64,000 nucleotides of DNA, taken from NCBI GenBank assembly GCA_026936335.1, contig JAPMXV010000004.1, positions 310,001 through 374,000 on the forward strand, given 5' to 3'. Below the pieces are notes generated by a model. The model was given only the letters and a program-made list of their open reading frames with translations. It was not told the origin of the DNA and made no database searches. Below, one piece after another: positions 1 to 64,000 of the stretch (positions within the stretch are counted from its first letter, which is position 1; each line of letters starts with the position of its first letter). This DNA is from Mantamonas sphyraenae STR306. Lineage: Eukaryota; Protista; CRuMs. A program made the translations under genes and the position numbers.

Positions 1-221
1 CAGGTGGCAAGCACAATGGCCACGATGAGGACCTCGAATCCCAAGCGAGTGCACAAGGTCATGACCAGGGTCAGGGCAGGCGACTTGTAGTCTGCATGCA
101 GCTGGCGGATAAAGTCCAGGCCGTTCTGTTCGAGCGAGTCAAGCTCAAAGGTGGCTGCCATGGCCACTGCCAGGAGGGAGGCGGCAGTCAGCACGGCAGC
201 AACGGACGGACTGTGGGACAT
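1..221 (-). CDS. 5' part of a membrane protein, probably PAP2/glucose-6-phosphatase-like (runs off the window)
   Basis: Manual translation from ATG 221: MSHSPSVAAVLTAASLLAVAMAATFELDSLEQNGLDFIRQLHADYKSPALTLVMTLCTRLGFEVLIVAIVLAT... A hydrophobic leader precedes a 'GLDFIRQL...LT..M...T.LG' pattern typical of PAP2-family N-termini. Catalytic motifs lie outside the window. Confidence 0.45.
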   Translation of the reverse strand, partial: MSHSPSVAAVLTAASLLAVAMAATFELDSLEQNGLDFIRQLHADYKSPALTLVMTLCTRLGFEVLIVAIVLAT

Positions 222-305
222 TTGGGGATGGGATGGAGACAGGTAGGATTGGGTGGGTGGATGTGCGGAGCGCGGGTGGAGGCAAAGCGACAGCACGACA
301 CAGAC

Positions 306-2316
306 ATGGAGTGGCAACGGCAAATGATGCACAACAACGAGGAGTTGCGCGACTTTATGCGCGACATGTCGCAGTGGGAAGAGCAGATGGAGGCAAAGGA
401 TGCAGCGTTGCGGACGGCGGAAAAGCCGAGCCAGGATGTGCGTTTCTGATCGGTGGAAAGTGGTGGGATCACAAAGCGCATACTGACGCCATTGGGAGAC
501 CCTGCGGAACACCGGGGACGGTCGTGTTGTTCGGGAATGCACACATACACGTGCAACACACCGGATTTGGAATGGATGGACCCCTGGATGCGTGTGGGTG
601 GAACACTGGAATCGGGAACGCGCGCAGAAGCTGCCGCCGGTACGAGGAAAGGGCCAGACACGGAGTGAACGACAAGCGACAGCACGGAGCGAGACGTCGG
701 ACAGCAACAAGGGAGGAGGAGCAAAGGGGGAGGGCAAAGAGCAGGAGGAGGCCCAGCATGTGACGAAGCTGGACGACAAACCGCGGATCTCGTCGTACGA
801 CTACGATGCGTGGGCAAGCTACGATGTGGTAGGTGTGGAATCAACATCATCAGCAGGAGAGGATGGAGAACATTATGGGAGAGAGGTAACTGACACAGCG
901 GGAGCATCATACACGTTGCAGGACAAGGCTCTGAAAGATCTGGACGAGAAGGACGCACCGCAGGCAAGCAGCGGCGGCGTGCGCAAGGCTCCGCGGAAAA
1001 AGGTGGTGGATGCAGGGAGCGAAAAGGCACGGGGCAACGAATTCTTCAAGCGGGGACAGTACGCGCAGGCTGTGGAATGTTACAGCAGCAGCCTGGAGCT
1101 GGGACCGGAGCAGCCGGCGATTGTTTACGCAAACCGGGCTCAGGCGTACATCAAAATGGAGGCATACGAACAGGCGGAAGCAGACGCGCACCGTGCGGTG
1201 GAGGAGGATCCGACGTATGTCAAGGGGTGGGCCAGGCGTGCACATGCGCGCAAGGGCCTCCGCAAGTACGCCGAGGCGCTGGAGGACTTTGAGCACGTGC
1301 GTGGACTCAAGCCTAACGACGCAGACACACGCAAGCAAATCCGACAGCTGCGTGCATTGCTGCCGAGCCACGGGGCTGGCAGCAAGGTTCCAGAGCGGCC
1401 TCGGCGCAAGATTGCCATTGAGGAGGTGGAAGAGGACGAGGAGGACGAGGAGGTGGTTGTGGAGTTGAACTCCACGACAAACAACACAACAAAGAGTGTG
1501 ACGACAAGCACGTCACCAAGCTCGGGTGGAGGACGAGTGCAAAGCGTGAAGCCGCGTCGCAAAATGGCGATTGAAGAGGTGGAGGGGGATGACGATGATG
1601 ATGAGGAGGAGGTGGCCCTCCAAGCGTCACCGTCACCAAAGGCTCAGGACACACAGCGCAAGAGTGGTGGGAATCGTGTGCTTATCGAAGAGGTCAGCAG
1701 CGAGGGAGAAGAAGCCGAGGGAGAAGCAGCGGGCCACAGCAGCAGTAGCAGCAGCAGCAATGGAGCCAAGAGCAGCAGTGCAGATGTACAAACGGCCAAG
1801 GCGCTGGCAGCAGCCAAGGCGAAGCGTGCGGCAGAGGCAGAGGTGAAGGAGGCGGCAGCGGGAAAGACGGCGGGTGGCAGCGGGAAGAAGGGCAAGAAGA
1901 GCAAGAAAAAGAGCAGCAGTGGAGTGAGCAACAAGGCACCGATGAGCAGCATGAAGTTTGTCAAGACGTGGAATGCGCTGGAGGGCGACACAGAGAAGCA
2001 GTTTGAATTCGTGAGTGCGATTGCACCGGGCGAGCTGAAGCTGATTTTCAAGGACAACATGGAGTCCAAGATGCTTGTGTCGTTGGTAGAGCTGGTGGGC
2101 AGCGAGTACGTGGCCAGGGGTGAGGTGCGCCTTGCACTTCGCACGTTGGTGGGCCTGAGCAACGTGAAGCGCTTCAGCATGCTGCTTGCGTTTGCCGGAA
2201 GTGCGGGCAAGGCGACGGTGCGCGACAGTGTGGCCAAGGTGGCCGAGGCGTGTACAGACAGCGCCGACCAGGCGTTGTTGGCGCAGGTGACCAGTGTGTA
2301 CGGCGGGGCTGAATGA
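306..2316 (+). CDS. RPAP3: RPAP3/SPAG1-like TPR co-chaperone (R2TP complex)
   Basis: join(306..437,628..2316); phase-0 intron GTGCGT...CAG. Contains the N-terminal 'QMMHNNEELRDFMRDMSQWE' segment, a TPR clamp 'EKARGNEFFKRGQYAQAVECYS...YANRAQAYIK...YVKGWARRA', and an RPAP3_C-like tail 'FVKTWNAL...LKLIFKDNME...LSNVKRFSMLLAF'. Confidence 0.85.
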
Positions 2317-2339
2317 AAACGATGATGTCCTTCGAATCC

Positions 2340-2906
2340 TCATCCCAATCCGACACCCTGTGTCAGCTCGGACATGGTGTCTTGGTCAAGGTACGGGTTG
2401 TGCTTCCATACAATCGAGAGGGCGACAATGTGTTTTGGGGAGGCGTGTGCACGGAGTGTTTCGAGGACCCCTTGCTTGAGTTGGGTCTCGTTCTCGAGGC
2501 ACACGAGCGCCTCGTGCATGAGCGAGGCGCGCTGCAATACATCGCTGCTGCCGTGCATAATGTCATCCATGTCTTGTGGTGAGCGTATGAGAGAGAGAGC
2601 CGTGCGTGCGTCGCTCTCAGCGTCACACAGGTCCTCCAGGGCATCCAGCATGGCCGTCAGGTGTCGTTCCATCTTGCGGAGGCCATTGTAGACGTGGAGA
2701 GCATCGTTGACGCGTTCGTTGTCGAGGGAGAAGTGTTCTGGAGTTGTGTCTTGCTGGGGTACGGAGCCGAGGTTGGCCAAGATGGAGGCCGCTGCTGCGT
2801 CCTGCTCTGCCCAGGTCTTGTAGGCTCGGAGAAAGGTCACGTGGCTGTCCTGTATGGCCTGGACGCACTGGAGCACGACCTGAGCCGTGGGGGTGGAGGA
2901 AGACAT
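2340..2906 (-). CDS. CINP-like helical protein (188 aa)
   Basis: ATG 2906 to TGA 2340. Helical/coiled content, and the C-terminal 'LKQGVLETL...LSIVWKHNPYLD' resembles the CINP 'W..QPY' motif. The family call is tentative. Confidence 0.5.
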   Translation of the reverse strand: MSSSTPTAQVVLQCVQAIQDSHVTFLRAYKTWAEQDAAAASILANLGSVPQQDTTPEHFSLDNERVNDALHVYNGLRKMERHLTAMLDALEDLCDAESDARTALSLIRSPQDMDDIMHGSSDVLQRASLMHEALVCLENETQLKQGVLETLRAHASPKHIVALSIVWKHNPYLDQDTMSELTQGVGLG

Positions 2907-2956
2907 TCGAGCTGGGCTGGTCACACCGCCGCATCCATCAAAAACGACTCTTCGAC

Positions 2957-5852
2957 ATGAGCAGCAGCCAACCGCAGTTCTTTTTCAAGTCGGAGAACGC
3001 GCAGAAGCGTGCCGAGGGTGAGTGGGAATGGAGCGGGAGCCTGTGTGTGTGTGTGTGTGTGTGTGTTGGGTGGTTGAAAAAGTGTGGTTGGAATGGGGAT
3101 CACTGCCCCTTGGCGACGACCCTGGCGGCCACGTGGGCAGGTTGCACTCGTTTGCGGCGTGTGAGGCGCATCAACTGAGGCACGCAGATGTGTTGGTGGA
3201 GGAGACAGGGACACAGGATTGCGTGGTGAGAGAGGGGGAGGGCCGGGAGCAGAAGCTGACGCACACACATGCAATTTGGCAACGCGGTTCCTTTGTTTCC
3301 CAGAATTCATCTCGGTGGGCAAGAAGAAGGCGGCACTGGACGTGTTGCACTCTGTGGTAGTGTCGCGTCGCCACAAGCAGTGGGACGAAGCGCTGGAGAG
3401 CGTGATGATGCTGTTTCTGGACCTGTGTGTTCAGCTGCGTGAATCGCAAATTGCCAAGGAGGGTCTGTACCAATACCGTTCGGCGTGCTCGAACGTGTCG
3501 TACAACTCGCTGGAGGTTGTGATTGACCACTTTCTGAACCTGGCCAACGAAAAGGCAGCCAACGCAAAGGAAAAGGCGTTGACAATGAACCTGGAGCTGG
3601 ACGACCTGGAAGACGAGACGATGGAGTCTATGATTGTGGCCGCGGTGTCGGGCGAGGAGGCATCGGATCGCAACGACCGGGAGATTGTCGTGCCGTGGCT
3701 GAAGTTCCTGTGGGAGACGTACAGGACGGTGCTGGATACGTTGCGTTTCAACTCGAAGCTGGAGCTGATGTACCACAACACGATCGAAAAGGCGTTTTCG
3801 TTCTGCGAGTCGTACTCGCGCAAGAACGAGTTCCGCTCGCTGTGCTCCATCCTGCGCCAGCAGATGGGCATTTTGATGCGCTACCAGGACCAGTCGCAGA
3901 ACAGCGACCTGAGCGACCCGGACGTGCTTGCGCGCTTCCTGACGTCGCGCTTCCGCCAGTTTGAGGTTGCGCGCACGCTGAAGCTGTGGCGCGAAGCGTA
4001 CCAAACGCTGCAGGACATCCAGGGGCTGATCAACTTCAACACGGGCGCCAACCTCGTGTCGAAGCAGCATATGTTCCAGTACTTTGAGGGTGTGGCGCAG
4101 CTGTTTGCTCTGTCAGACAACCACCTGTACCATGCGCACGCGAAGCTGCGTCTGTTCAACCTGCTCATGCAGAAGAAGGGCGTGTCTGGGGAGGAACGCC
4201 GCGGCCACGCCGACGAGCTGCTGCTGTGTGCGCTTGTGGTGCCGGACCACGAGCCGAACCGTCCTGGCACGACGCTGCTGACCATGTCGCAGCAGCACGA
4301 GTACTACAAGCTGAAGCCGCTTGCAGACATGCTGGGGTTCACGTCGCTGGACCAGTCGCGCAACGCCTTGCTGCGCGAACTGCGCAGCAAGGGTCTGCTG
4401 AAGCTTGTGTCTGCCGAGGTGCGCGAGGCGTACACGCTGCTGGAGAGCACATACGACCCGCTGAACCTGGGCAAGCTGGTGGCTCCGTTTGTGGAGAGTG
4501 TGGAGAGCAACGAGAGGCAGGCGCGATACGCAGAGCTGCTGAAGAAGCTGTCTGCATTCCGCGTGCTGCAGCAGCTGGCCAAGGTGTTCCACAAGCTGAA
4601 GATGGAGCAGTTGCGCGAGCTGATCCCGTTCATGTCGTTTGCAGACTTGGAGGTGCTGATTGTGGAGTGTGTGCGCAACGGACGCCTGAACGTGATGATC
4701 GACCACGAAAAGGCATGCGTGGTGTTTTCGGATGACAACAAGTTCTGGGAGACGGAGAGTGCGCGCCAACAGCTGACGAACCTGAGCAAGAGTCTGCACA
4801 AGGCGATGCCGCTGATCGACCCGGAGCTGCGGGACAAGCGACGCATGCGCAAGGCAGAGCTGTTCAAGCAGATTGTGGCCAACCTGGAAGAGGAACACAA
4901 GCGTGTGATGCGACGCACGGGCGTGATCGAGCAGCGCAAAGAAACGCAGGAAAGGATCATGGAGGAGCAGATGCGTGCCGAGGAGCTGCGGGAAGCACGG
5001 GCGAGCAAGGCACGTGAGGAGTCTGAAGTGGCGCGTTTGCAAGAGGAGGCACTGTTGCGTGAACAGGAACGCATGAAGGAGTTGAAGGAGAAGCGCGAGG
5101 AGGAGGAGGCGCAGGAGCTGCGTGAGAAGCTGAAGGCCAAGGGCAAGGAGGTGGACAAGTCGTACACGGTGGAGCAAATGCGCATCACACTTGCGCGCCA
5201 GACGCGTCTGGAGATGCAGGCGGAGGAGAGGCGCATGGCGAGCCTGGCACGCAAGCTGGACCACATGGAGCGTGCGCGTCGCCACCTGGAGATGGAGAAG
5301 CTGGAGGAGTACAGCCGTGCGCTGTCGGAGCACAACGCAGCACACTTTGAGAAGGAGCAAAAGATGATTGTGGCGCAGGCGGAGAAGAAGCACTCGCTGC
5401 AGATGGCGGAGAAGGAGCGCATGAGCAGGCTGCTGACCGACTTTAGCGAGTTTGTGGACACTGCACTGGAACGGCGCGAGTACAGGTTCCAGAAGGCCAA
5501 GGCAAAGAGACAGAAGGAGCTGGCGGAGCTGTGTGCTCGCCGGGACAAGGAGCGTGCTCGCCAGGAGAGGGAGGAAGCAAAGAAGCGAGCCAAGGTGGAA
5601 GAGGCTGAGGCGCGTGAGCGCGAGCGCTTGGAGCGTGAACGCAGCAGTCGTGGGGACGCTGGCAATGAGGGCCAGGCTGGACCACGTGTGGCGGTGGGAG
5701 CCTGGGGGCAGCAGCGTGCGGGCGCAGAGAGCTGGCGAGAGGAGGAGGAGAACAGCGCCGACTCGGTGGAAAGCGATGAGTCGCGTGGACGGGGCACACG
5801 TGGGCGTGGGCGTGGGCGCGGGCGTGGACGTGGACGTGGGCGTGGTGCATGA
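2957..5852 (+). CDS. EIF3A: Eukaryotic translation initiation factor 3 subunit A
   Basis: join(2957..3017,3304..5852). Contains 'FKSENAQKRAE/EFISVGKKKAALDVLH', 'AKEGLYQY', 'PWLKFLWETYRTVLDTLR.NSKLE..Y', a PCI domain, a charged helical region and a C-terminal RG repeat. Confidence 0.97.
3042..3066. repeat. (TG)n microsatellite in the eIF3a intron
   Basis: About 12 TG units read directly. Confidence 0.9.
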
Positions 5853-5933
5853 GGTGGTTGTGGGATGTGGAATGGGAAATGAATTGAGGTTGTGGCCGAA
5901 GCGCTTGTGGACGCAGCACAAAATTTGCAAAGA

Positions 5934-6854
5934 ATGGTGAGTAGACGAAACATGCGATGTGTGTAAATGGGTACAGGAATGCGACGTACACGCAGTGGAT
6001 GGGCTGCGGAAGGGTGATGACGTGTGTGTGAGCGGTGCGAGGCGCGGGAAGGGCAGAGGGAGAGGAGGTGAATTGCATGCTGACTCGCTCTTTTTGGACG
6101 GCGCTACAGAGCTACGGAAAGTTTGTAGAGATCGGCCGCATCGCTCTGGTGAACTATGGCAAGGAGAAGGGAAGCCTGGTGACCATTGTGAACATTGTGG
6201 ACCAGAACCGAGTAAGTTTGCGGGCGGTGAAAGTCGCGGTGGGCGAGCGAATTTGCAGGCTGACGCAAGGCGACTCGCACACACGTTTCAGGTGCTGGTG
6301 GACAGCCCCAAGGAGATGCGCCAGCTGATCAACCTGAAGCGCCTGGCTCTGACCTCGCTGAAGATCAAGCTGCCCGTGGCTGCCCGTCATGCGACGGTGG
6401 TGAAGGTAAGAGGGGAACATGCGCCATTTTTGCATGCGTTTCCACGCAGCCTCTGCGCGCGCCCTTGCACACGCAGCGTGCATGTATAGCTTGTGCGCAT
6501 GCACGCACGCTGGGCAACCCTTCGCGTTTGCGTTGTGTGTGTGTGTGTGCGACACATGTGCGGCCTGTGGGATGTGTGAGCGTGTGCGGAGTGTAGATGG
6601 GACGCGGGAGTTTGGCTTGTTCTCTGTGTTCTCGCATGGCACTCACACAATGTGCGCTGTGTTGCTCGTGTGTACAGGCCTGGAACAAGGAGAACGTCGA
6701 GGAGCAGTGGAACCAGACCTCGTGGGCTCGCAAGCTGGCCGCTCGCAAGCAGCGTGCCAACAACTCGGACTTTGACCGCTTCAAGGCCATGCTCGCCAAG
6801 AAGCGCCGCAACAAGGCAGTCGGCAAGAAGTTTGTGTCTCTGAAGAAGGCCTAA
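5934..6854 (+). CDS. RPL14: 60S ribosomal protein eL14
   Basis: join(5934..5936,6110..6211,6292..6405,6678..6854); the first coding exon is the ATG alone. Contains 'KFVEIGRIALVNYG', 'IVDQNR/VLVDSP' and 'DFDRFKAMLAKK'. Confidence 0.97.
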
Positions 6855-7091
6855 TTGATCTGGGAATCTCGCAGAAATCAAATGCAACCACCGTCACACG
6901 TCACTTTGGCGTCACTTTGTGGTGTTGCTGTTGAGTCGCCGCGCTCTCTCTTGTTGATTGTGACCGTTTGTTTGCTGGATGACTGTGTGCATGCGTGGTT
7001 GTGTGAGTGTGTGCCTGCCGGTGGTGGGTGTGTGCATTCACTGCATCGGTGGGTGTGGATTGACGCGCTGAAGCAGCAAACGAAAACAAGC

Positions 7092-9060
7092 ATGGCGTAC
7101 CTGTCCCAGGCAGACCTGGAAGGCCTGCACCGGTACAAGTACGGCGGCCAGGATCTATCGCTGATCAACAAGTATGTGCTGGGTCCGTTTTGGAACTGGC
7201 TGATCACTCTGTTTCCGCGTTCGCTCGCGCCAAACATGGTAGGTCGAAAAGCGCGCGACAAAACCTGGACACGCGCCTCTGACACACGCGCGCGACCTCG
7301 TACATGGTGCAGATCACCACCATTGGACTGGCGATGACCGCCAGCACCTATGTGCTCTGTGTATACTACAGTCCCCTCGTGGACCAGGAGCTTCCGCGCT
7401 GGCTTTACTTTGCCATGGCCGCCACGCTTTTCGCTTACCAGACGCTCGACAACCTGGACGGCAAACAGGCACGCCGCACAGGCACCTCGGGCCCGCTGGG
7501 CGAGTTTTTTGACCACGGTGCGTTTGTTGTGCACGATGCACGTCGGAACATGATGCATGGTGCCATCCCCTCCTATCCCTCGGCCTGCTCAGAGAGTTGT
7601 TCATCATGCGCATCCAAATTGCACCCGAGAGGGCCCACCGCGTGGAAACGGAGGGCCTCGTGACCAGGCGTGCCCAGACAGTGCGCTAGATCCCCATGTC
7701 TCGTCGCGTCTTATCTCTGCATGGCCCACTGCTGCATCTGCCTTGTGCTCGCCATCCGCATGCACGTCCGCGGCGTCCTGTTCACATGCGCGCGCCATTT
7801 TCTGACACATTTCACCTGTTCGTTCCCCTGGCCACTTCCAGCCTGCGACTCGCTGAACGTGATGGTAAGCGCATACACACACAGACAGACATCCACACAT
7901 TCGAAGGGCGACATTGCATGAACGCTGACTCTGATATGTCAACAGCTTTGCGGCATGCAGCTCAGCACCACCGCCATGGCTGGCCCGTCGTACTTCTCCT
8001 TTGCTCTGTGGGGCTTTGCTGCCCCCACAGCCTTCTTCTTTCACACCTGGGAGGAGTACCACACCAGCACCATGATCTTGCGTGAGGTCAACGGCCCCAT
8101 CGAGGGACTGCTGATGATCCAGGTGTTCTACCTCGCCACAGGCTACTTTGGCCCCCAGCTGTGGGAGCAGTCGGCCTACGCCGCATTCCTCTCTGACGAA
8201 GACGTCGCTGCCTACAACCTGCCCCCCATGACCATTGCCTCGGCGTTTGCCATCTTTGGCTTTATCGCGGCCATTGTGACTGTCGCCGTCAAGTACGTTC
8301 CACACACACACACACACCCTTCCCTTTCCCCTTGCTTGGCCACAATGATGAGACAGCACTTCTTAGGACACCTTTGAAGCTCAAGAGAGCTCTTGAAACC
8401 AAACTGTGTTTACCCAAACTGAGTGTGCCAAGCGCTTGCCCATGGTTTCTCCCGCCAGCTCTTTTTCTCGCTTCACCCGTCGCTAACTCATGCTCCCCCC
8501 ACACACGTCTCGTTTCCGATATCTCCAGTGTCTATGCCGTGCTCTCCCGCAAGGCTGAGATTCTCTCGGGTTCCAACGACGCACTTGCCGAGCGTCTCAC
8601 ACACACGGGCTCCGTTTCCACTGCCGTTGGCCACCTCATGCCCTACCTTACCTGGCTCCTGGCGGCCAACCTGTGGGTCTACGCCTCGTCGCTGCGTGCA
8701 GACTCCTTCTACGTCCTGCACCCTCATCTCTCCGCCTGGACCGTCGGCTTTGCCTTTGCGCTCGTCACCGACCAGCTCATTGTGGCCCACATCACCATGT
8801 CTCGCTACTTTGCCCTCAGCTTCCCCAATATCCTCCTCCTTCTCCTCGCCTTTTCCGAGGCGGTCGTCATTTGGCGCCCGCAGTCTCTCCTCGCCTCCGT
8901 CCTCACTTCCGAGCGCCTCTTTAACGCCGCCGCCATCTACACTGTCTACATTTCCCTTACTTACTTCCACTACATCCGCGGCTGCGTCTCCCAGATCACC
9001 TCCTTCCTCGGCATCCGGGCCTTTTCCATTCCGCCTCCCAACCGCCAGAAGGGACTCTAG
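7092..9060 (+). CDS. Choline/ethanolamine phosphotransferase (CEPT1/EPT1 family)
   Basis: join(7092..7238,7313..7517,7842..7864,7946..8292,8529..9060). The CDP-alcohol phosphotransferase motif 'DNLDGKQARRTGTSGPLGEFFDH/ACDSL' is completed across a 23-nt exon; also 'LHRYKY', 'LAPNM/IT', 'TWEEYHT' and multiple TM segments. Confidence 0.93.
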
Positions 9061-9074
9061 GTCAATGAAAAGCT

Positions 9075-11314: not shown

Positions 11315-11423
11315 TAGCTTTGTCTGTTCTACACAGTGTGTGTTTATGTGTGTGGTGTGTGGGGTGGGATGGGTGGCCTCTCGGTTGGCAAATTTGGCTG
11401 CCCAGAGCGACGCACGCACAGCG

Positions 11424-13211
11424 TCAATTCTCCAACAGTTCCAATGCACGGCTGGCGTCCACCGTCTCCACGTGGCCCGAACGCCTATCTTGCACCTCGT
11501 ACGCATCGGATGCCAGCGTCTTTGCTGACACAACCACGACCTTTGGGTATCCCACAAGCGCCGCATCCGTCAACTTGACCCCGGCGCCCAGGCGGCGGTC
11601 GTCCAAAATGACATCGTCTGCATTGGGCATGAGAGAGTGCAAGCGCAGCGCATGGTCCATCAGCTCGCCGTTGATGCCTTCGTCCAAGGCCTTTTTCGTG
11701 TGCAACAGCGGTACAATGGCTGTATGGAACGGAGCCAGCGACGCGTTCCAACGTATCCCCTGTGCGTCGTGGTTGGTCTCGATCATGGCCGCCACAATGC
11801 GTGTCAAGCCCAGACCGTAGCATCCCATGTGCATGGGAGTGGCGCTTCCATTGGGACCCGGCACACACGCGTCCAGTTTCGTCGAGTAGTGTGTGCCCAG
11901 GAGGAAGATGTGGCCCACCTCGATGCCACGACGCTCTTGCAGCCGTCCATGGTTACATTCTGGACAGGTGTCGTCGTGTCTGGCCGTACGCACGTCTGCG
12001 TGCAAGGCAGCGTCACCCACGCGTTCGTGTGTGCATTGTACATCAATCACGTGCACCGTTTCCTTGTCCGCGCCTTTGCTCACATCCAAAGCGCCCACTG
12101 CCTTGGTAAGCTTGACTGTGTTGACCTCATCGCCATGGGCCAGCGTCACGCGCACGCGTTGTCCGCCCACCTCCATGTCGACATCCTGGACGCCGCCACT
12201 GGACGCAGGCGCTGTGCCGCGTGCCATTTCTACATTGGCTGCGTAGGAGCAGCTGGAGCAGCTCAGGAGGGTGTCTTCGCCCACGTCGGACAAGACATGA
12301 AACTCGTGCGAGCGGATCCCACCGATGTTGCCGTTGTCTGCTTCGACCATGGCCCAGTCCAGCTCCAGTGTGTTCATGATGTTTGTGTAGCTGTCCATCA
12401 TCACCTCGTACGTTTCCTCCGCGCCGCTCATGTCCTTGTCGAACGAGTACATGTCCTTCATCAAAAACTCGCGCGCACGCATCATGCCAAACCGGGGTCG
12501 TACTTCGTCGCGGTACTTGCGACCTGTGATCCACGCGTCCATCGTTGTGAGCGGGAATCGAGCACGTGTCGAGTCTTTATGTGAGCTGCCGCCGGTGCTG
12601 CAAGGCCGTCTGCCACAAAGTCACTCACCAATTTGGTACAGGCGAAGCGGGAGTTGCTCATGCGATGTCACACAGGTGCGCACAATGTCTGTGATGCACT
12701 CTTCGTGTGTCGGTCCCAAGCAGTATTCGTGGCCAGTTCTATCGTGCAGGCGGATGAGCTCCTTGCCTGTGCTCTCCCACCGCCCTGTCTCCTTCCACAG
12801 GTCGCCCGACAACATGATTGGCATGGAAAGCTTCGTACATCCTGCATGTGTGTGTGCGCGCGCATGTTCATGTGTGTGTGAGTGTTGTCGCGTGAGCACA
12901 AGTAGCTCCAACCTCCTTACCTGCTTGCTGCAGTTCTGTGTCCACAATGTCCTCCAACTTGTCCAATGTGCGCACCCCGAGTGGCAAGATGGAATAAATG
13001 CCATTGGATGACTGTGTACGTCCCCCTCTGTGTCAGGGTCCTTGGTGCGCCTTCCACTGCGAGTGCATGCTCCTCCTCACACACCTACCCGACGCATCAT
13101 GCCAGCACGCAGCATCAACTGGTTGCTCACAATCAGATCGTCGCTGACAGACCTCAGCGTGGGAATGAAGAAGCGCGATACAAGCGCTGGGCCTTTGTTA
13201 CTTGTGCTCAT
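11424..13211 (-). CDS. PARS2: Bacterial-type (probably mitochondrial) prolyl-tRNA synthetase
   Basis: complement(join(11424..12523,12629..12841,12921..13011,13089..13211)). Motifs 'QLMLRAG', 'LGPTHEE', '[26 protein letters not shown]', '[15 protein letters not shown]', '[10 protein letters not shown]', plus an anticodon-binding domain. Confidence 0.93.
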
Positions 13212-56000: not shown

Positions 56001-58443
56001 CGAGGGAAAGGGTGATATGTTGGTCATCGTGGTCCTGGACGCGAACGAGGTGGCCCAGGTCGACGTCTGTGTCCTCGAGGAGGGTGACGATGGGGGAGGA
56101 GAGGAGAATAAGCGGGACGTCGTTGACCGAGGTCACGCTGATGACGACGATAGCTTGGGCGATTCCTGCAGGGTTGTGGTCGTCAGCAAGGAGAAAAGTG
56201 ATGTTTTGGACGCCGTGAAAGTTGGCAGGCGGGCTGTAGAGCAGACTCGGGAGGCTAGCCTGAAGGGCTGTGAGGTTTCCCGTGGCATGAATGCGAGAGA
56301 TGGATCCCGTGGTGTTCACATAGGAGACGTGGAGGCCGTTTGGGTTGAGGAGCTGAAGGGAGCCTTGGGAGAAGGTGATGTTGAGGGAAAACAAGGCGTC
56401 CGGGTGTGCGTCGACGTCGGTGAGGTTCCAGAACGTGAGGGGCAGGAGGTGGTCCTCGGGTATCTGGTAGGCGAGGGTGGTGTGCATGAGGGGCGGGTCG
56501 TTGACCGGGTCGATGGAGAGTGGGAGGTCGATATCGACATAGCGGCCAAAGGAAGGGTGCGCCTGTGGATGAGGAAGGCCCGAGTGGGCATAGTCGTAGG
56601 CGCGTATGTGAAGAGTGGCAGAGCCGTGGTCGCGGTTGGGCTCGGGCACGATGCGGAGGGACTGGAGGTCATGGGCAAAGGTTGCGGCGGACGTGTTGAG
56701 GACCAGTTGTGTGGCATTGGCCAAGATGAGCTGGAGGGGCTCCGACGAGTTGATGTGGAGGGTTGCCAGGGGATCGCCGTGGAGAGAAATGTACAAGCGG
56801 ACGGGATCGGTGGGTTGTGCGTCGGAATCGTTGAGACGAATGGACGGGTGTCGGGCAAGGAGCGGATAGGGAACGTCCTCGGTGATGATGATGGAGGCGG
56901 GCATTCCATGGATGGTGGGAGGGTTGTTGACCGGGAGACAGAGGGAAGCGTTGGCGGTGGCTGGTAGGGATGTGTTGGTACCAGCGGGACAGGGGAGACA
57001 TTGGGAGGCGGCAGAGGCCGGTGCGTAGGAGTTGAGAGGGCAGGGAGTGCAGGACTGGGCATCGCTCGTGTCTGTGTAGTATCCTGGCTGGCAGGGGGTG
57101 CAGAGGAAGCCACCGAAGCCTGCGGAGCAGGAGGGCGGGGCAGAGATGGCAAAGATGTCGAGGCCGCCGACCGTGGGAGCTCCGTAGAAATCGTTGCCCG
57201 TAGCGGCTGTCGTACCAGTGATGCGCACAAGGGAGTCTGAGCCGAGGCGCAGGGCGACGGCCATGTCTGTGCCGGCGGTGCCAAACTGGCGGGTGGAGAG
57301 AAGCTGGCCGTGGGGAGAAAAACGCATCAGAAAAGAGTCTGCGAAGCCGGCGTGTGTTTGGGAGGGAAGGGCGGCAAAAGTGGAGCCGGTGATGAGGATG
57401 TTGTGTGTTGAGGGCTCAACGACGACGTCAGTACCCTTGTCGTTCGAGGATGAGCCTGCCTGGACGCTCCAGAGCCTGGTTGCGTTGGGGGCAAAGGCCG
57501 AAAGGACGATGTCTGTGGCACCGAAGGCGGTTTGGCCATCGTAGGAGGCGGAAGCGATGTGACCGGTAAAGTAGATATGACCGGAAAACTGGTCGACGGT
57601 GACATGTGCGGCTGTGCAGGCGCCGGGGCCGCCGAGAATGCGCGTCCACATGAGGGTTCCGTTGGTGGCAAGGGCCGCGAGCCAAAGGGCTTGTGCAGGG
57701 CCTACGGATTCGCCGTTGAGGTCGGTTTGAGTTTGGCCAAAGAGGTAGAGGGTGTCGGAGGCGTTGTGGTAGGCAGTGCTGGTGAGTTGGACGGTGGAAG
57801 AGCCACCGAAGCGAAGCTGCCAAAGAAGGGCGCCTGTAGGGGAGAGTTTTTCGACGAGGACGTCCTGTGGACCGACCTTGAGAGTGCCCGGGACGTGACC
57901 TGTGACGGAGTAGGCGAGGTAGAGGTCGCCACGGGCGTCTATGGCGATGGATCCAGGCTGATCTGTGTCGTTGCTGCCTCGAGTGGCATTCCAGACGGAG
58001 TCGCCCGTCAGGGAGTCGAGCTTGAGCAGAAAGACGTTCTGAACGGGTGCTTGGAGCGGGTCAGACATGTTTCCGATGACTGAGCCGTGGACGTAGAGGG
58101 AAGAAGAGGGGCTGTGGAAGAGTAGGGAGGCGACAAAGTCGGCTCCAGGAGTTCCAAACTGGCGGCCCCACTGTAGGGTGAGGTTTGCGTCGAGGCGTGC
58201 CACGATGGCATCGTTGGAGCCGGACGAGTCGCCATAAACAGCTCCGGGTACGCTGCCTCCAAGAAAGAGGGCGTTTGTGTCGGGGTCGAGGGCAATGCCC
58301 TCGGTGCCGTCGAGGGTTGCGGAGCCCAGGCGAGTTGCCGCAGGCTGGCCTGTTGCAGAGGATGTTTGTACGGGTGTGATGCATGCTGAAAGTAAGAGCA
58401 TGCATGTGAGGAAGCCAAGCGTGGCCCATGGGGTGCGAGGCAT
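32016..58443 (-). CDS. Giant (~8,800 aa) polycystin-1/adhesion-receptor-like membrane protein; one gene split by five apparent indels
   Basis: ORFs 53317..58956 (true ATG 58443, signal peptide), 36179..53617, 35349..36215, 33509..35872, 32599..34038 and 32016..33038 join at ~53620, ~36210, ~35800, ~34098 and ~33045, mostly in homopolymers. Domain order: beta-propeller, Cys-rich, ~30 cadherin-like 'VNDxP' repeats, 4 FReD/LamG cassettes, Cys repeats, IPT, REJ, GPS 'CRYFD....WS.KGC.......CQCTHLTSF', Cys repeats, EGF, multi-TM domain, acidic tail. Confidence 0.8.
34275..34520. repeat. Poly-Gly/(Gly-Ala)n/poly-Ala coding low-complexity tract
   Basis: CCN-rich triplet arrays and (CCCGCA)n on the + strand encode AAAAA...GAGAGAG...GGGG in the giant protein. 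Confidence 0.9.
38280..38750. repeat. Six 78-bp (26-aa) Cys-rich coding repeats 'CDGxPNSG...DxCGVCGG...C'
   Basis: Seen in the translation. A second cluster of about 4 units lies at ~34715-35035. Confidence 0.85.
40129..48670. repeat. Near-identical in-frame tandem duplication, period 4,266 bp (1,422 aa)
   Basis: The sequence at 40131 recurs at 44397 and its first bases at 48663. Shadow ORFs recur at a 4,266 offset (41300/45566, 41313/45579, 42513/46779). Confidence 0.97.
50124..52333. repeat. Third near-identical copy of the ~2.2-kb FReD/LamG cassette (matches 46596..48805, offset 3,528 bp)
   Basis: Direct comparison. Shadow ORFs recur at a 3,528 offset (46779/50307, 47574/51102). Confidence 0.95.
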
Positions 58444-58644
58444 CCTTGAATGGTTGTTTTTGAAAGTTTTGATGGTGCAGGCAGGGTGGGATGTGAGGAA
58501 AGGAGGAAGGAGGGGAGAGGGAAGGTGATGGGCAGGGGTTGTTGAGGGGGGAAGGGGATTTGGAGGGAAGGGATGCAGGGGTGAGACAAAGGCGGACCGG
58601 TGCGATCGTAGACGCACCACAACACCACATTCACACAAGAGAGG

Positions 58645-61600
58645 ATGGACGTGGAAAGCAACAAGGGTAGCCAGCAGGCAGCTAGCAACACGGTGGGCAG
58701 CAGCAGCAGCAGCTCGGGTCACACGGAGGAGGAGGAGTTTGTGGACGAGTCGCTGTACTCGCGTCAGCTGTACACACTCGGTCTGGAAGCACAGCGCCGT
58801 CTGCAACGCAGCAACGTGCTGCTCGTGGGCGTACGGGGCCTGGGTATTGAAATTGGTGAGTGAGCATGTGGCGAATAGGGCGCAGAAGTCGGCCCGGCGG
58901 AAAAGACGGAATTGGAGCACAGGCGGAACCCTCTCTCGGGAGCTTTTTCGCGCCAAGGGGACACAGCGGGGACGGGGCGGACACTGACACTAGGAGAGAC
59001 GGCGCAACGTGGGTGGGCGGTGTCCGTGTGCACAGCCAAGGACATTGTGTTGGCAGGTGTGAACTCGCTGACGCTGCTGGACAACGAGGTGGTGGAAGTG
59101 AGCGATCTCGGGGCGCAGTTCTTTCTGCGAGAAGATGACGTGGGCAAGAAGCGAGCGGCGGCGACAGTGGAACGTCTGGCAGAGTTGAACAACTATGTCA
59201 AGACGCGAGTGGACGAGCGTGCGGTGAGCGAGGTTGCGGACAAGGAGTACCTGGCGCAGTTTTCGGTGGTGATCCTGACAAACAACAAGTCGCTGGAGGT
59301 GACCAAGGCGGTGGGAGACATGTGCCACGAACTGGGCGTTGCGTTCATTGTGGCAGATGCGCGCGGGCTGTTTGGGTCTGTGTTTGTGGACTGCGGCGAG
59401 GACTTTGTGTGCCAGGACACGACGGGTGAAGAGGCACAGAGCGTGATGGTGTCTGGGATCAGCCAGGAGGAAAACGCGCTGGTGACGTGTGTGGAGGACC
59501 ACCGACACGGGTTCGAGGTGGGAGACATGGTGAGCATCAGCGAGGTGAAGGGAATGGTGGAGCTGAACGACGTCGAGTCGTGCAAGGTGACCAAGGTGGA
59601 CGACCCGTTCAACTTTAGCATCGATGTGGACACGCGCACCTTTGGGGCGTACACGACGGGCGGCTGGGCAACAGAGGTGAAGCAACCGACCACAATCCAC
59701 TTCAAGGCATTCAGTGAGGCGTGGCAAGAGCCGGCGATGGTGTACAGCGACTTTGGCAAGATGGAGCGAGCGACGACGCTTCACTTTGGGTCGCTGGCAC
59801 TGCTGCAGTATGCAGACGAGAACGACGGCCAACTGCCAGGACCAAACGACGCCGAGGCGGCAGCCAAGGTGAGCAAGCTGTGCGCCGAGCTTGCGGGCGA
59901 GGCGGTGGACGTGAGCAGCGAGGAAAACGCCAAGGTGCTGGCGACGCTGAGCGGGCACGCAGGGGCGGAGATTGCAGCAATGGCAGCTGTGATTGGCGGA
60001 ATGGTGGCACAGGAGGCGCTGAAGGCGGTGTCGGCCAAGTACAATCCGATCCAGCAGTGGCTGTACTTTGACTCGCTGGAGTCGCTGTCCAGCGTGCCGC
60101 TGGACGCAAAGGAGACTGCGCCGGAAGGGTCGCGGTACGACAGCTACTACGCGGTGTTTGGACGCACGTTCCAGCAACGTGTGCAGAACCTGAACTACTT
60201 CCTGGTGGGCTCGGGGGCGATCGGATGCGAGGTGCTGAAGAACTGGGCGCTGATGGGCTTGGGAACGGGAGCCAACGGAGGGATCACGGTGACGGACATG
60301 GACACGATTGAGCGATCGAACCTGAACCGGCAGTTTCTTTTCCGTTCGCAGCACGTGCAGCAGCTGAAGAGCGAAACGGCAGCAGCGAGCGTGAGGGAGA
60401 TGAACGGGGAGCTGAAGATCAAGGCAATGTCGGACCCTGTGGGCGGCAACACGGAAGAGATTTTCAACGACATGTTTATGGATGCGCTGGACGGCGTGTG
60501 CAACGCGCTGGACAACGTGGAGGCGCGCATGTACATGGATGCGCGGTGCATCTACTACCGCAAACCGCTGCTGGACGCCGGGACGCTGGGCACCAAGGGC
60601 AACACGCAGGTGGTGGTGCCCTTCCTCACCGAGTCGTACGCGTCGTCGCGAGACCCGCCTGAAGAGCACGCCGTCGTGCACCATCAAAAACTTTCCGAAC
60701 CAGATCACGCACACGCTGCAGTGGGCGCGAGACCGGTTCGAGGCGTACTTTGCGGCATCGGCACGGAATGCCAACGGATTTGTGGACGAGGGGCGTGCGT
60801 TTGCAGAGGCAGAAAAGAACGTGACGGGACGCAAGAACCTGCTGCAAGACATCGAGCGGAACCTTGTGACGGAAGTGCCCAAGACGTTTGAGGACTGCGT
60901 AGCGTGGGCACGCCGGCTGTTTGAGGTGGAGTTTTCAAACCAGATCAAGCAGCTGCTGTTTGCGTTCCCGCCGGACCAGGTGCAGTCGAACGGAGCGCTG
61001 TTCTGGAGCACGCCGAAGCGATGCCCGCACGCGCTGGAGTTTGACCCAAAGGACCCGCTGCATATGGAGTTTGTGGTGAGTGCGGCAAACCTGCGCGCGT
61101 TCAACTATGGCTTGGAGGGCAACCGAGACGCCGAGTCTGTGGCAGCGCTCGCGGCCAAGGTGAACGTCCCCGAGTTTACGCCGAGCAGCAAGGTGAAGAT
61201 CAACGCGGACGAAAAGTCGGAGGAAGGCAACGAAGAGGTTGCGGGTGATGAGGACGAGACGGAGGTGGAGCGCATCCTGGAGGTTCTGTCCAAGGTGAGC
61301 GCGCCGAAGAAGCTTGTGGAGGCCAAGTTTGAGAAGGACGATGACAGCAACTTCCACATGGACTTTATCACTGCGGCGTCGAACTTGCGTGCGACCAACT
61401 ACGAGATTGCCACGGAGGACAAGCACACGAGCAAGAAGATTGCGGGCAAGATCATTCCTGCGATTGCAACGACGACGGCGGTGGTGGCGGGTCTGATGAA
61501 CCTGGAGTTGTACAAGCTGTTTTCGCCCGAAGCCAAGGGCCTGGACGACTACAAGAACGGGTTTGTGAACCTTGCACTGCCGTTCATGGCGTTCAGCACG

Positions 61601-61984
61601 CCGATTGAGCCGCCTGCGATTGGACAGTTCCCGGGCATGGCGAGCAGCAGCGGAGAAGAGAAGAGCGAGTACACGATCTGGGATCGTTTCGACGAGGATG
61701 GGTCGGAGGGCGAGACGCTGGAGCAGTTCATCGAGCGATTTGAGAAGGAACGCGGGCTGGAGATCCAGATGATCAGCGCGGGCCAATCGATGCTGTATGC
61801 GGACTTTTGGAACCCGAAGAAGGTGAACGAGCGCAAACAGCTGACGGTGAAGGACCTGTTTGAGACGGTGACCAAGGCGGCGCTGCCCGAACACCAGAAG
61901 TACCTCGTGCTTGAGTGCGCGGTTGTGGACGTCAAGACGGACCTGGACAAGGACATCCCGTTTGTGCGCTACCGCATTCGCTGA
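58645..61984 (+). CDS. UBA1: Ubiquitin-activating enzyme E1, with one apparent frameshift at ~60662
   Basis: Exon 58645..58855, intron 58856..59035, then exon 2. Motifs '[13 protein letters not shown]', '[15 protein letters not shown]', '[17 protein letters not shown]', 'ALDNVEAR', catalytic '[10 protein letters not shown]', '[14 protein letters not shown]' and '[12 protein letters not shown]'. Confidence 0.96.
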
Positions 61985-61993
61985 GCCGGTGAA

Positions 61994-62835
61994 TTACAAG
62001 AGAATACATTTGCAGGATTGGTCAGGCGACGAGGACGGGAGGGTCTTGATGGGAGAATCGCTGCGGTGTGCGTCGCCGTCGCTGTCGGCCGGCGAATCTT
62101 TGTCGTCGATGGTGGTTGGGATCTTGCGGGTAGGGGAGGGGTCCTCGGACTTTGGTTGGAGTTGGTGGGTTGTGGTGGAGCCAACGAGGGTGGGGGGTTG
62201 GTCATCATCGTTCTGAAGAGCAGTCAGTGGGGAGGACTCGGAGGAGCTGGGTGCGTCTCGGAGCGGGCTAGGTTGGTCGACGTATTTTTGCTGGGTGGAG
62301 GGCAAGGTGGAGCTCTGCTGGGCAGGCTGGTTGAGGGGATGCGACGGGTCTTTGATCTGCAAGAGCGGCAGGGCAAGGTCTAGGTGTGAGGATGAGAGGC
62401 GCGGCGGAGGGAGGGATTGGGGGCAAAGGCCAGAAAACGGCTGGTGGAAAGGGAAATCCGCGAGGAGTCGGGCAGGGACGGGTACGGAAGAGGCTGGGGT
62501 GGACGAGACGCAGAGAGAGGGACACGTACGCGAACATGGATGTCTGCCGATCGGTCGGCGAGGATGGAAGGAAAGTCGTTGAAGGAGAGCGGGTCGATCA
62601 TGAGCTGGGTGTTGTTGAGAAATAAGGTAGAGTCTGAGTAGGGGATGTCATGGGCGTCGATGAGCATGCGCTTGGCCTGCATGACGGTGGCGCCGAGGAG
62701 GAGGGAGAGGGTGTCTGTGGTGCCGTTGGGAAAGTGCATATGGAGCTGAACAAACTCTGTGGCGTCCTCGTACTCGGCCATGACGTCGTTGAAGGAGGGC
62801 ACGCTGCCTGGCTCTGGCAGAGTGAGCGAGCTCAT
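61994..62835 (-). CDS. Ubiquitin-fold protein with a low-complexity tail and C-terminal CAAX (CKCILL), 222 aa
   Basis: complement(join(61994..62356,62530..62835)). Beta-grasp pattern 'VQLHMHFPNG...LGATVMQAKRML......LFLNNTQLMIDPLSFND'; the protein ends SCKCILL*. Confidence 0.7.
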
Positions 62836-62975
62836 GGTGTGTTGTGGTGGAGGAGGAGAGGAAATGCAGCCAATGTGCGTGTGGAGCGGATGGAGTGTGT
62901 GTGCGGTGGCTGTGGGTGCTGCAGGAAAAGGTTGGCTTTGCGAGAGCTGCGCCACACAACAGGGAAGCGAGAGCG

Positions 62976-64000
62976 ATGTTTGGCCTGAACCAGGACGAGG
63001 AGATCGGCATTGTGGCCGGAGTGGTTGTGGTTGTGCTGCTGGTGGTGTTTCTGTGCTTTCGGCAGCGGAGGAGGCGCCGGTTTGGGTACGGGGTGCTGGG
63101 CACGGAAGAAGGCATGAACACGCCGCTGACGTCGACGTACTACCAGTCGACAAACGAAAAGTGGAACGGTAGGTGTGGAAAGAGAGGGGAGGGAGAGCGG
63201 TGGGCAAGGAGGTGGGCGTGCGGACGCAAGGAAGGCGGTGGGAGGTTCGGGCGCGTGGATGAGTGGAAGAGGGTTTGACGTTTGCTGACACGAACGGGCG
63301 GTGTTGCACGTGGTGGCTTGGCACGGGACCGGGGCCGACGGGGCATCCTGGGAGCGCAGAGAAGGAAACACTGATGAATGCACGGTTCTATCTGCGAAGC
63401 GCGTTTTCGTATGCGTTTGAGCGGGAACTGCGGCGAATGGGCACGCGTGCAGAGAAGGAGTACTTCTTGGTGAAGCACAACAACGATGGGGTGCGTGTGA
63501 TGTCGATGGTGCTGAAGGGAGACGACTGTGTGGTGCCGCTGGACAGTGAGAACGGAAAGCAAACGGTGCGGAGCCTTCTGATGGCCATCAAACACCCGTA
63601 CGTGTATCCGACGAGCGATTTCGATTTCATGGGAGCCAAGGACCTGGCGTTTGTGTTTCGGGAGTTTAACGCAAAGGGATCGCTGCGAGACTACATCTAC
63701 AAGGCGAACCCGCGGGATCCTCAGGGGGTCAAGTACGGCCAGGGAGAGGCATTGGCAGAGCGCAAGGTGGCCAAGTTTGGACGGCAGATCCTGGAGGCGC
63801 TGCTGTTCCTGAACGCAAAGGGGGTGCCGTACAGCCACCTGAAGACGTGCAACGTGATGGTGGTGAAGGGGACGTGCCAGTTGACAGACTACGAAAATGA
63901 CATCCTGGGCCTGAGCGGACAACTGGAACCGTACGTGTCGCAGCTTGTGGGCGTTGACGCACAGGTTGGCGCGTTTGGGCATGTGCTGTACGAAATGGCG
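62976..64000 (+). CDS. Slob/PXK-family pseudokinase with an N-terminal TM anchor (3' end outside the window)
   Basis: join(62976..63168,63360..>64000). TM 'IGIVAGVVVVVLLVVFLCF-RQRRRRR', then 'ARFYLRS', 'HPYVYP', 'KGSLRDYIYKANP', 'FGRQILEALLFL', 'HLKTCNV', 'LTDYENDILGL' and 'FGHVLYEMA'. HRD and DFG are absent. Confidence 0.85.

What the first reader, a model, noticed from the sequence alone, without database searches (positions are those of the whole stretch)
1..64000. Alternating 10-20-kb G/C-skew domains that ignore transcription direction: a possible replication-origin map
Seen by eye: the + strand is G-rich at ~1-7.2 kb, C-rich at ~7.5-16 kb, G-rich at ~17.5-30.3 kb, C-rich at ~30.6-52 kb and G-rich at ~53-64 kb. 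Skew persists across divergent gene pairs (ALYREF/HTT, giant gene/UBA1) and flips inside single genes. HTT goes from CTC/GTC/ACC to CTG/GTG/ACG codons, and the giant gene has 25G:11C at 56521-56580 but 9G:28C at 41041-41100 (illustrative lines). Introns and microsatellites mostly follow, (TG)n versus (CA)n. G-to-C flips look sharp and C-to-G flips look gradual. Inference: replication-linked mutational asymmetry from fixed, efficient origins ~23 kb or more apart. Sharp steps would be origins, implying a C-rich leading strand, opposite to the usual bacterial rule. Skew this strong at this scale is unusual for a eukaryotic nucleus.
Basis: partly seen in the sequence, partly recalled or inferred. 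Interest (0 to 1): 0.8.

Follow-up and report, generated by a model that had tools for sequence, protein, structure and literature searches.

The report
Replicon-scale G/C strand-skew domains
In this small GC-rich eukaryotic chromosome, one DNA strand is strongly G-rich or C-rich in alternating 10-40 kb blocks whichever way the genes point; this is most likely a very strong footprint of fixed replication fork directions, which would let origins and termini be read from sequence alone.

Summary
At four-fold degenerate sites, + strand GC skew is +0.54 in + genes and +0.51 in - genes inside G-domains. It is -0.35 and -0.47 inside C-domains. Single genes reach +/-0.8, which is G:C of about 9:1. 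Non-coding DNA follows, and two long ORFs (HTT, a ~22.8 kb adhesion-like gene) flip sign internally. Gene strand explains about 11% of the variance, so transcription is excluded as the cause.

The window lies 28.5 kb from a TTAGGG telomere. The last 40 kb form one G-rich domain, with about twice the amplitude of internal domains. A second chromosome, probed by motif orientation, shows the same alternation and the same telomere-ward polarity.

The best explanation is a replication-direction-linked mutational asymmetry with fixed origins and fixed termini 25-35 kb apart (inferred, not shown).

At neutral sites all nine flips are 0-4 kb wide, and amplitude is equal beside both kinds of flip. Which flips are origins is unresolved; I lean about 60:40 to C-to-G flips as origins, giving a G-rich leading strand.

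Many unchecked first-reader notes of this scan report the same skew elsewhere in this genome. I found no paper describing it.

The parts
1..7200 (.). G-rich domain on the + strand. It continues from 7.2 kb left of the window. Neutral-site skew is +0.25. It holds RPAP3-like (+) and eIF3a (+).
   Evidence: Segmentation. Four-fold skew is +0.39 and +0.49. Pfam.
5850..8400 (.). G-to-C flip, centre about 6.9-7.2 kb with a ramp of about 2 kb. It lies in ORF-poor DNA between the 3' ends of eIF3a (+) and SET2 (-). A local GC minimum (0.49) sits at 6910.
7201..17400 (.). C-rich domain, neutral skew -0.17. It holds SET2 (-), a class II aaRS (-), RRM/ALYREF-like (-) and the first 2.5 kb of HTT (+).
   Evidence: Four-fold skew on the + strand is -0.38, -0.01, -0.30 and -0.11.
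16800..18800 (.). C-to-G flip inside the single HTT ORF (14938-23163, +). Centre is about 17.4-17.8 kb, with a ramp of about 2 kb.
   Evidence: HTT Pfam hits.
17401..29100 (.). G-rich domain, neutral skew +0.34. It holds the HTT 3' part, a GNAT-like gene and an SSF transporter, all on the + strand.
   Evidence: four-fold skew +0.65, +0.61, +0.54.
29100..30600 (.). G-to-C flip in a 3.6 kb ORF-free gap between convergent genes. The ramp is about 3 kb. It is the lowest-GC kilobase of the window (0.539) and holds a 10-bp tandem repeat at 30547-30592.
30601..52200 (.). C-rich domain, neutral skew -0.09 to -0.36. It holds GPS/TRP-like ORFs (-) and the 3' two-thirds of the giant gene (-). It includes 4266-bp tandem repeats that are 100% and 98% identical.
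52200..53700 (.). C-to-G flip inside the giant ORF. Neutral skew goes from -0.33 to +0.38, then to +0.66. Contigs of three independent runs cover the flip.
52201..64000 (.). Start of a 40 kb G-rich terminal domain that runs to the telomere, 28.5 kb beyond the window. It holds the giant gene 5' part (-), UBA1 (+) and a kinase (+). Beyond the window it holds SNF2 (-), G-patch/R3H (-) and Ank/HEAT (+).
   Evidence: Four-fold skew is +0.49 to +0.82 on the + strand for genes of both strands.
36182..58989 (-). Giant adhesion-like gene with cadherin-like, Big_9, fibrinogen C, laminin G/pentraxin and REJ domains. Its sense-strand four-fold skew is -0.63 in the 5' part and +0.66 in the middle.
   Evidence: The one-base difference at 53623 that joins its two ORFs is.

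Best explanation
The chromosome is tiled by domains of fixed replication fork direction. A strongly strand-asymmetric mutational process has driven neutral sites close to a G-versus-C equilibrium in each domain. That process exchanges mainly G for C, with a weaker A-over-T excess on the G-rich strand.

Sign flips mark fixed origins and equally fixed termination sites. Flips of the same kind lie about 25-35 kb apart, which is the replicon spacing of yeasts.

**Shown:** the domains, their independence from gene strand, their effect on all three codon positions, and their telomere-ward polarity at two chromosome ends.

**Inferred:** that replication is the cause.

**Working polarity (about 60%):** C-to-G flips (17.8 and 52.7 kb in the window) are origins and the leading strand is G-rich, as in bacteria and human. 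The region distal to the last origin is then always replicated outward, which would explain why the terminal domain has the strongest skew. One candidate chemistry is loss of C on the single-stranded lagging-strand template, fixed as C-to-G. This is speculative.
For: 1. **Four-fold sites, + strand coordinates.** G-domains: +0.535 in + genes and +0.511 in - genes. C-domains: -0.347 and -0.470. Non-ORF DNA: +0.27 and -0.17.
2. **Neighbouring genes with Pfam-confirmed strands.** SNF2 (-), G-patch (-) and Ank/HEAT (+) have + strand four-fold skew of +0.74, +0.82 and +0.81.
3. **Gene boundaries.** There is no mean skew jump at divergent (-0.08) or convergent (-0.08) boundaries.
4. **Flips inside ORFs.** Flips occur inside continuous ORFs, and independent contigs cover one of them.
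5. **Spacing.** Up-flips lie at -74.6, -39.6, -7.4, 17.8 and 52.7 kb.
6. **Terminal domain.** It is 40 kb long, reaches the (TTAGGG)n end, and has skew 0.37-0.59 against a mean of 0.23 for internal domains.
7. **Second chromosome.** On C1, G-run and C-run motifs form alternating blocks (z = -3.9). The first 7 kb at its left telomere hold 9 C-run loci and no G-run locus.
8. **Machinery.** ORC2, Pol epsilon, 6 MutS and 4 MutL homologues are present.
9. **Precedent.** Replication-linked skews are established in bacteria, human and yeasts (PMC3459929).
Against: - No replication data (fork direction, timing, ORC/MCM binding) could be examined, so the link to replication is inference by exclusion.
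- A G:C ratio of 3:1 to 9:1 at neutral sites needs a far larger leading/lagging asymmetry than any wild-type eukaryote is known to have.
- Mismatch repair genes are present, so loss of repair does not explain the strength.
- The profile is a square wave, which requires termination sites as fixed as origins.
- Under the favoured polarity, two of five origins would lie deep inside ORFs, while all four down-flips lie at or near convergent gene ends, where origins would fit well.
- Up-flips have the more symmetric flanking arms, as termini should.
- Only 192.5 kb of one chromosome was read directly.
Confidence: 0.7

Rival explanations
1. Replication-linked skew with the first reader's polarity. 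G-to-C flips (6.9 and 29.9 kb) and a subtelomeric element are the origins, C-to-G flips are termini, and the leading strand is C-rich.
For: - All four down-flips lie in or beside ORF-poor gaps at convergent gene ends, with local GC minima.
- Two of five up-flips lie deep in ORFs, where passive termination is natural.
- Termini should lie midway between origins. Arms around up-flips are more symmetric (length ratios 0.90, 0.40, 0.90, 0.57) than around down-flips (0.76, 0.53, 0.22, 0.47), from the positions.
- Yeast leading strands are C- and A-rich (PMC3459929).
- The conserved subtelomere shows a G-to-C inversion about 200 bp before the telomere.
Against: - It needs a very efficient origin at every chromosome end to explain terminal domains that are up to 40 kb long and twice as skewed as internal ones.
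- The sharpness argument it was built on fails at neutral sites.
- It makes slightly more genes head-on than co-directional (35 to 21; not significant).
- In yeast the G-rich strand is also T-rich. Here it is A-rich.
Confidence: 0.28
2. A strand-asymmetric process other than fork direction. One candidate is damage to long single-stranded 3' tails made by resection at chromosome ends and at recurrent internal break sites. Another is break-induced replication toward telomeres.
For: - The polarity fits: the 3'-ending strand toward a telomere, or to the left of a break, would lose C and become G-rich. This matches both chromosome ends examined and would make G-to-C flips the break sites.
- The terminal domains are the strongest.
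Against: - Resection tracts are normally about 1 kb to a few kb, not 10-25 kb (established knowledge).
- Every base of 192 kb lies in some domain, which needs a process that touches all DNA regularly, as replication does.
- Flat, square-wave amplitude across domains does not fit a process that should decay with distance from a break.
Confidence: 0.1
3. Transcription-coupled mutation or repair, or selection on codons and mRNA, produces the skew. The domains would then merely reflect runs of co-oriented genes.
For: - Neutral skew correlates weakly with gene strand (r = 0.33).
- 35 genes have a G-rich sense strand against 21 with a C-rich one.
- Within the window, most domains hold genes of one strand.
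Against: - Four-fold skew is the same for + and - genes within a domain.
- Sense-strand four-fold skew ranges from +0.81 to -0.82 among Pfam-confirmed genes.
- There is no jump at divergent or convergent boundaries.
- Non-ORF DNA follows the domains.
- Sign flips occur inside single ORFs.
Confidence: 0.02

Closest known systems
Bacterial replichore GC skew (leading strand G>C; sign change at oriC and terminus)
   Same: The skew is strand-wide and independent of transcription. It is visible at synonymous and non-coding sites and also shifts amino-acid composition. The steps are sharp at both kinds of boundary. GC skew is much stronger than AT skew.
   Different: - This is a linear eukaryotic chromosome with telomeres and about a dozen domains per 400 kb, rather than two replichores.
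- The four-fold amplitude (up to 0.8) is at or beyond the bacterial extreme, to my knowledge.
- The G-rich strand is slightly A-rich rather than T-rich.
- Polarity relative to the forks is not established.
Human skew N-domains (as summarised in PMC3459929)
   Same: The skew is replication-linked, measured after removing the effect of transcription. It has jumps interpreted as fixed germline origins.
   Different: - Human N-domains are about 1 Mb, the skews are a few percent, and there are no downward jumps. The decline between origins is linear.
- Here the domains are 6-40 kb, the skews are 0.2-0.8, and both kinds of flip are at most 4 kb wide, with flat amplitude between them.
Replication-associated GC/TA skews of S. 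cerevisiae, K. lactis and C. albicans (PMC3459929)
   Same: The genome is compact, inter-origin spacing is about 30 kb, some termination sites also show skew jumps, and origins are intergenic.
   Different: - To my knowledge yeast skews are of the order of 0.01 and are only seen by averaging over hundreds of origins. Here a single locus shows them by eye.
- In yeast the leading strand is C- and A-rich, so G travels with T. Here G travels with A.
GC-skew flips at Candida and Yarrowia centromeres (PMC2924309; disputed in PMC3459929)
   Same: Both are local skew sign changes in a eukaryote proposed to mark constitutive origins.
   Different: In those yeasts there is one flip per chromosome, at the centromere, and its link to replication is contested. 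Here the flips tile the whole chromosome arm.
Gene-linked GC skews (5'/3' skew of unicellular fungi, PMC3315797; trypanosomatid polycistron skew)
   Same: Both give strong strand composition bias in compact protist or fungal genomes.
   Different: Those skews follow the direction of transcription. This one does not.

Membership tests
Replication-associated compositional strand asymmetry | Skew is present at selectively near-neutral sites (four-fold degenerate and non-coding) | tested here: met
   four-fold skew is +0.51 to +0.54 and -0.35 to -0.47. Non-ORF skew is +0.27 and -0.17.
Replication-associated compositional strand asymmetry | The sign is independent of the direction of transcription | tested here: met
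   with gene strands confirmed by Pfam.
Replication-associated compositional strand asymmetry | Sign changes coincide with mapped origins and termini (switches of fork direction) | not testable with these tools
   No replication data were available. Only assembled contigs of DNA runs could be laid, on one 6 kb stretch.
Replication-associated compositional strand asymmetry | Domain size matches replicon size | tested here: met
   Same-sign flips are 25-35 kb apart. This is comparable to the inter-origin distances known for yeasts (established knowledge).
Replication-associated compositional strand asymmetry | Complementary substitution rates differ between the two strands of a domain | tested here: inconclusive
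   The internal repeats are 100% and 98% identical. Differences to three runs are unpolarised. Neither can give directional rates.
Human-type N-domains | Sharp jumps of one sign only, with a linear decline between them | tested here: not met
   All nine flips are 0-4 kb wide. |skew| is 0.233 beside both kinds of flip.
Transcription-associated skew | The sense strand carries a constant sign of skew | tested here: not met
   Sense-strand four-fold skew ranges from +0.81 to -0.82.

The most novel reading that the evidence does not exclude
This eukaryote replicates from highly efficient, evolutionarily fixed origins and equally fixed termini. It also carries an unusually strong, mainly G-versus-C (purine versus pyrimidine) leading/lagging mutational asymmetry. 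Its whole nuclear genome would then carry a bacterial-strength replication map, readable from sequence alone, that rewrites codon usage and protein composition according to a gene's position in its replicon.
Probability: 0.6. Interest if true: 0.85.

Novelty: new variant of a known kind. Interest (0 to 1): 0.8.

Why it matters
**Replication map from sequence.** Replication-linked skews in eukaryotes have so far been faint statistical signals. If this one is replication-linked, origins and termini could be placed to within about 2 kb from sequence alone in a compact eukaryote. Fixed termination could also be studied.

**Mutagenesis.** It would reveal a natural strand-specific mutational process several-fold stronger than any known in wild-type eukaryotes.

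**Protein evolution.** Mutation pressure that depends on chromosomal position reshapes proteins here. First and second codon positions shift by 0.2-0.3 in skew between domains.

**Practical consequences.** Codon-usage, gene-finding and phylogenetic models for this organism must allow for position-dependent strand bias.

Tried and rejected
- **Transcription as the cause:** rejected.
- **Chance:** rejected.
- **Misassembly at the intragenic flip:** the ORFs are continuous, and contigs of three runs tile 51.8-57.8 kb.
- **Loss of mismatch repair as the reason for the strength:** rejected at the level of gene presence, with 6 MutS and 4 MutL homologues.
- **APOBEC-type deaminase:** no APOBEC_N match. 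UDG is present. The REV1_C search was uninformative because its control did not ring anywhere.
- **AT-rich origin islands:** none found. The minimum 200-bp GC is 0.45. Even so, 6 of the 20 lowest-GC spots lie within 1 kb of flips, of both kinds.
- **Polarity from flip sharpness, amplitude profile or jump size:** no usable asymmetry.
- **Polarising substitutions with the 4266-bp repeats:** the copies are too similar.
- **SNP strand asymmetry from the public runs:** the differences are unpolarised and uninformative.
- **Trinucleotide context of the asymmetry:** no distinctive signature in contexts with symmetric flanks.
- **tRNA at a flip:** the ARAGORN tRNA-Gln inside HTT has no Rfam support.
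- **Genome-wide test on all chromosomes:** not possible. I did not try to get round it, and used only motif positions on chromosome C1.
- **Organism identity:** not established. A guess was used only to steer literature searches, which found nothing on this skew.
- **Literature:** no paper describing this phenomenon was found in nine searches.
- **Tools not needed:** the large protein searches, structure prediction and complex prediction were not used.
- none.
Full report
**Setting**

The window is G000:C4:310001-374000 of a 25.06 Mb genome in 78 contigs. Chromosome C4 is 402,514 bp and ends in (TTAGGG)n 28.5 kb to the right of the window. C1 to C3 carry telomere repeats at both ends. The genome therefore appears to consist of many small chromosomes assembled telomere to telomere.

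GC content is 59.3% and very even. The 200-bp mean is 0.596, SD 0.033, minimum 0.45. Genes are mostly long single ORFs.

I could read C4:210001-402514, which is 192.5 kb including the window. All sequence statistics below rest on those 192.5 kb. Coordinates are window coordinates; negative values lie to the left of the window.

**Gene map**

| Gene | Coordinates | Strand |
|---|---|---|
| RPAP3-like | 487-2313 | + |
| eIF3a | 3165-5849 | + |
| SET2 | about 8.5-10.9 kb | - |
| class II aaRS | 11427-12620 | - |
| RRM/ALYREF-like | 13267-13956 | - |
| huntingtin (one ORF) | 14938-23163 | + |
| GNAT-like | 24140-25441 | + |
| SSF transporter | 25.5-27.5 kb | + |
| GPS/TRP-like ORFs | 31.5-35.9 kb | - |
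| giant cadherin-like/REJ gene | 36182-58989 | - |
| UBA1 | 58.9-62.0 kb | + |
| kinase | 63263-64690 | + |
| SNF2 (beyond the window) | 67683-70310 | - |
| G-patch/R3H (beyond the window) | 72337-75108 | - |
| Ank/HEAT (beyond the window) | 75529-85758 | + |

For the whole 192.5 kb I called ORFs with a strong/weak base periodicity score. This score is blind to G-versus-C skew. It gave 62 ORFs and 69% coding.

The HTT codon switch is real: NNC:NNG goes from 349:239 to 338:856, p = 3e-36. At third-codon plus non-ORF sites, the SD of 1-kb skew is 0.315 against 0.057 expected by sampling. Autocorrelation is 0.87 at 1 kb, 0.54 at 5 kb and 0.05 at 20 kb.

**The skew is not transcriptional**

Four-fold degenerate sites, in + strand coordinates:

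| Domain | + genes | - genes | non-ORF DNA |
|---|---|---|---|
| G-domains | +0.535 | +0.511 | +0.27 |
| C-domains | -0.347 | -0.470 | -0.17 |

- Among Pfam-confirmed genes, sense-strand four-fold skew runs from +0.81 (Ank/HEAT) to -0.82 (G-patch/R3H), -0.74 (SNF2) and -0.63 (giant gene 5' part). These genes are neighbours on opposite strands in one domain.
- The mean change in neutral skew is -0.08 across 13 divergent boundaries and -0.08 across 13 convergent ones. A transcriptional effect predicts opposite signs.
- Gene strand correlates with neutral skew at r = 0.33 only.
- First and second codon positions shift by 0.2-0.3 in skew between domains on either gene strand, so protein composition is affected.
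- AT skew at four-fold sites follows weakly, with A on the G-rich strand: +0.05 to +0.13 against -0.18 to -0.22. This is a purine/pyrimidine asymmetry dominated by G versus C, at unchanged GC content.

**Domain structure**

A likelihood segmentation of neutral sites places the flips as follows.

- C-to-G flips: -74.6, -39.6, -7.4, 17.8 and 52.7 kb.
- G-to-C flips: -63.4, -13.1, 6.9 and 29.9 kb.

From 52.2 kb to the telomere, 40 kb in all, the + strand is G-rich throughout. Segments range from +0.33 to +0.80 and fifths from 0.37 to 0.59. That is about twice the mean internal amplitude of 0.23.

Two up-flips lie inside continuous ORFs, HTT and the giant gene. All four down-flips lie at or next to convergent gene ends.

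Ramp fits give widths of 0-4 kb for every flip, with no difference by direction. The profile is therefore a square wave, not the N-shape of human skew domains.

**A second chromosome**

Without further letters, I used the positions of an 11-base G-run motif and of its complement. In my 192.5 kb this pair predicts the domain sign with 95% accuracy.

On C1, the first 132 kb hold 26 G-run loci and 32 C-run loci. They fall in 15 runs where 29.7 are expected, z = -3.9. The first 7 kb next to the left telomere hold 9 C-run loci and no G-run locus. So at this end too, the G-rich strand runs 5' to 3' toward the telomere.

Genome-wide the two motifs are balanced, 14,776 against 14,868.

Many first-reader notes of this scan report the same skew, and telomere-polarised terminal domains of 21-35 kb, at other ends of this genome. 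They are unchecked leads. I could not test them beyond C1.

**Independent data**

Contigs from three runs of one study tile 51.8-57.8 kb, including the flip. They differ from the reference at about 1-1.6% of positions. These differences are unpolarised and cannot give directional rates. All three runs carry an extra G after 53623. That base joins the two overlapping giant ORFs into one of about 22.8 kb.

**Mechanism**

Transcription is excluded, and the effect covers every base of the region in domains of replicon size. Replication fork direction is the only established process that fits. I hold this at about 0.7, and it remains an inference.

Canonical machinery is present: ORC2, Pol epsilon, UDG, 6 MutS and 4 MutL homologues. 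Neither an exotic replication system nor loss of mismatch repair is therefore indicated. No APOBEC_N domain was found. Trinucleotide contexts with symmetric flanks show similar skews, +0.23 to +0.36, so no diagnostic signature emerged.

A G:C ratio of 3:1 to 9:1 at equilibrium implies a several-fold rate asymmetry between complementary G/C changes. One route consistent with G gained at the expense of C, with little change in A or T, is:
1. cytosine loss on the lagging-strand template,
2. uracil excision,
3. insertion of C opposite the abasic site, which yields C-to-G.

This is speculation.

**Polarity**

In bacteria and human the leading strand is G- and T-rich. In S. cerevisiae, K. lactis and C. 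albicans it is C- and A-rich (PMC3459929). Phylogeny therefore gives no prior.

*For C-to-G flips as origins (G-rich leading strand):*
- The region distal to the last origin is always replicated outward. This predicts both the polarity and the exceptional strength of the terminal domain without requiring telomeric origins.
- The polarity fits the chemistry of cytosine loss in single-stranded DNA.
- Genes are mildly co-oriented with the forks, 35 to 21 (not significant).

- Down-flips are all intergenic, at convergent ends, with GC dips.
- Two up-flips lie deep in ORFs.
- Up-flips have the more symmetric arms, as meeting points of synchronous forks should.
- The conserved subtelomeric element has a G-to-C inversion about 200 bp before the telomere, which could be a terminal origin.

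I put this at about 60:40 and regard it as open.

**Novelty**

Nine literature searches found no description of such a skew in a comparable eukaryote. Because I could not establish which organism this is, a publication under its name cannot be excluded.

The kind of signal, replication-linked strand asymmetry, is known. What looks new is its strength, its square-wave form with fixed termini, its G-with-A character and its coverage of a eukaryotic chromosome.

Noticed in passing
window 53623 (ORFs 36182-53872 and 53320-58989, - strand): All three public runs carry one extra G after 53623 compared with the window. With it, the two overlapping giant ORFs become a single ORF of about 22.8 kb. The window has either a one-base assembly error or a strain difference.
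   Followed up: partly
window 40129-51600: Inside the giant gene there are 4266-bp tandem repeats with two 100% identical copies and a third partial copy at 98%. This points to very recent duplication, gene conversion or assembly collapse. The repeats inflate the apparent uniformity of the skew at 40-48 kb.
   Followed up: partly
window 31500-37300, - strand: The giant gene ends in a REJ domain. The next ORFs downstream on the same strand carry a GPS motif and a TRP-type channel domain. Together they resemble a polycystin-1-like receptor, and may be one gene split by an intron or a frameshift.
   Followed up: no
C4 right end (window about 91300-92514); C1 both ends (L038, L039): The subtelomeres share a conserved element. 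About 800 bp are very G-rich on the telomere-ward strand. An approximately 200 bp inversion to C-rich follows directly before the TTAGGG repeats.
   Followed up: partly
window 19217-19299: ARAGORN calls a tRNA-Gln inside the HTT ORF. Rfam finds nothing in the whole window, so it is probably a false positive.
   Followed up: yes
L005:3583-7518 (+), window about -66.4 to -62.5 kb: A 1312-aa ORF combines HRQ1-type helicase domains (DEAD, WHD_HRQ1, MZB) with a weak N-terminal match to the replication licensing factor CDT1 (E = 3.7e-5). It ends at a G-to-C skew flip.
   Followed up: no
window 51801-57800: The public runs differ from the reference at about 1-1.6% of positions. At some places they show two alternative short contigs, which suggests heterozygosity or mixed strains.
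   Followed up: no
192.5 kb region, flips at -63.3, -39.4, -8.3/-7.1, 6.9 and 30.5 kb: Six of the 20 lowest-GC 200-bp spots lie within 1 kb of skew flips of either direction, where about two are expected by chance. The cause is unknown.
   Followed up: partly
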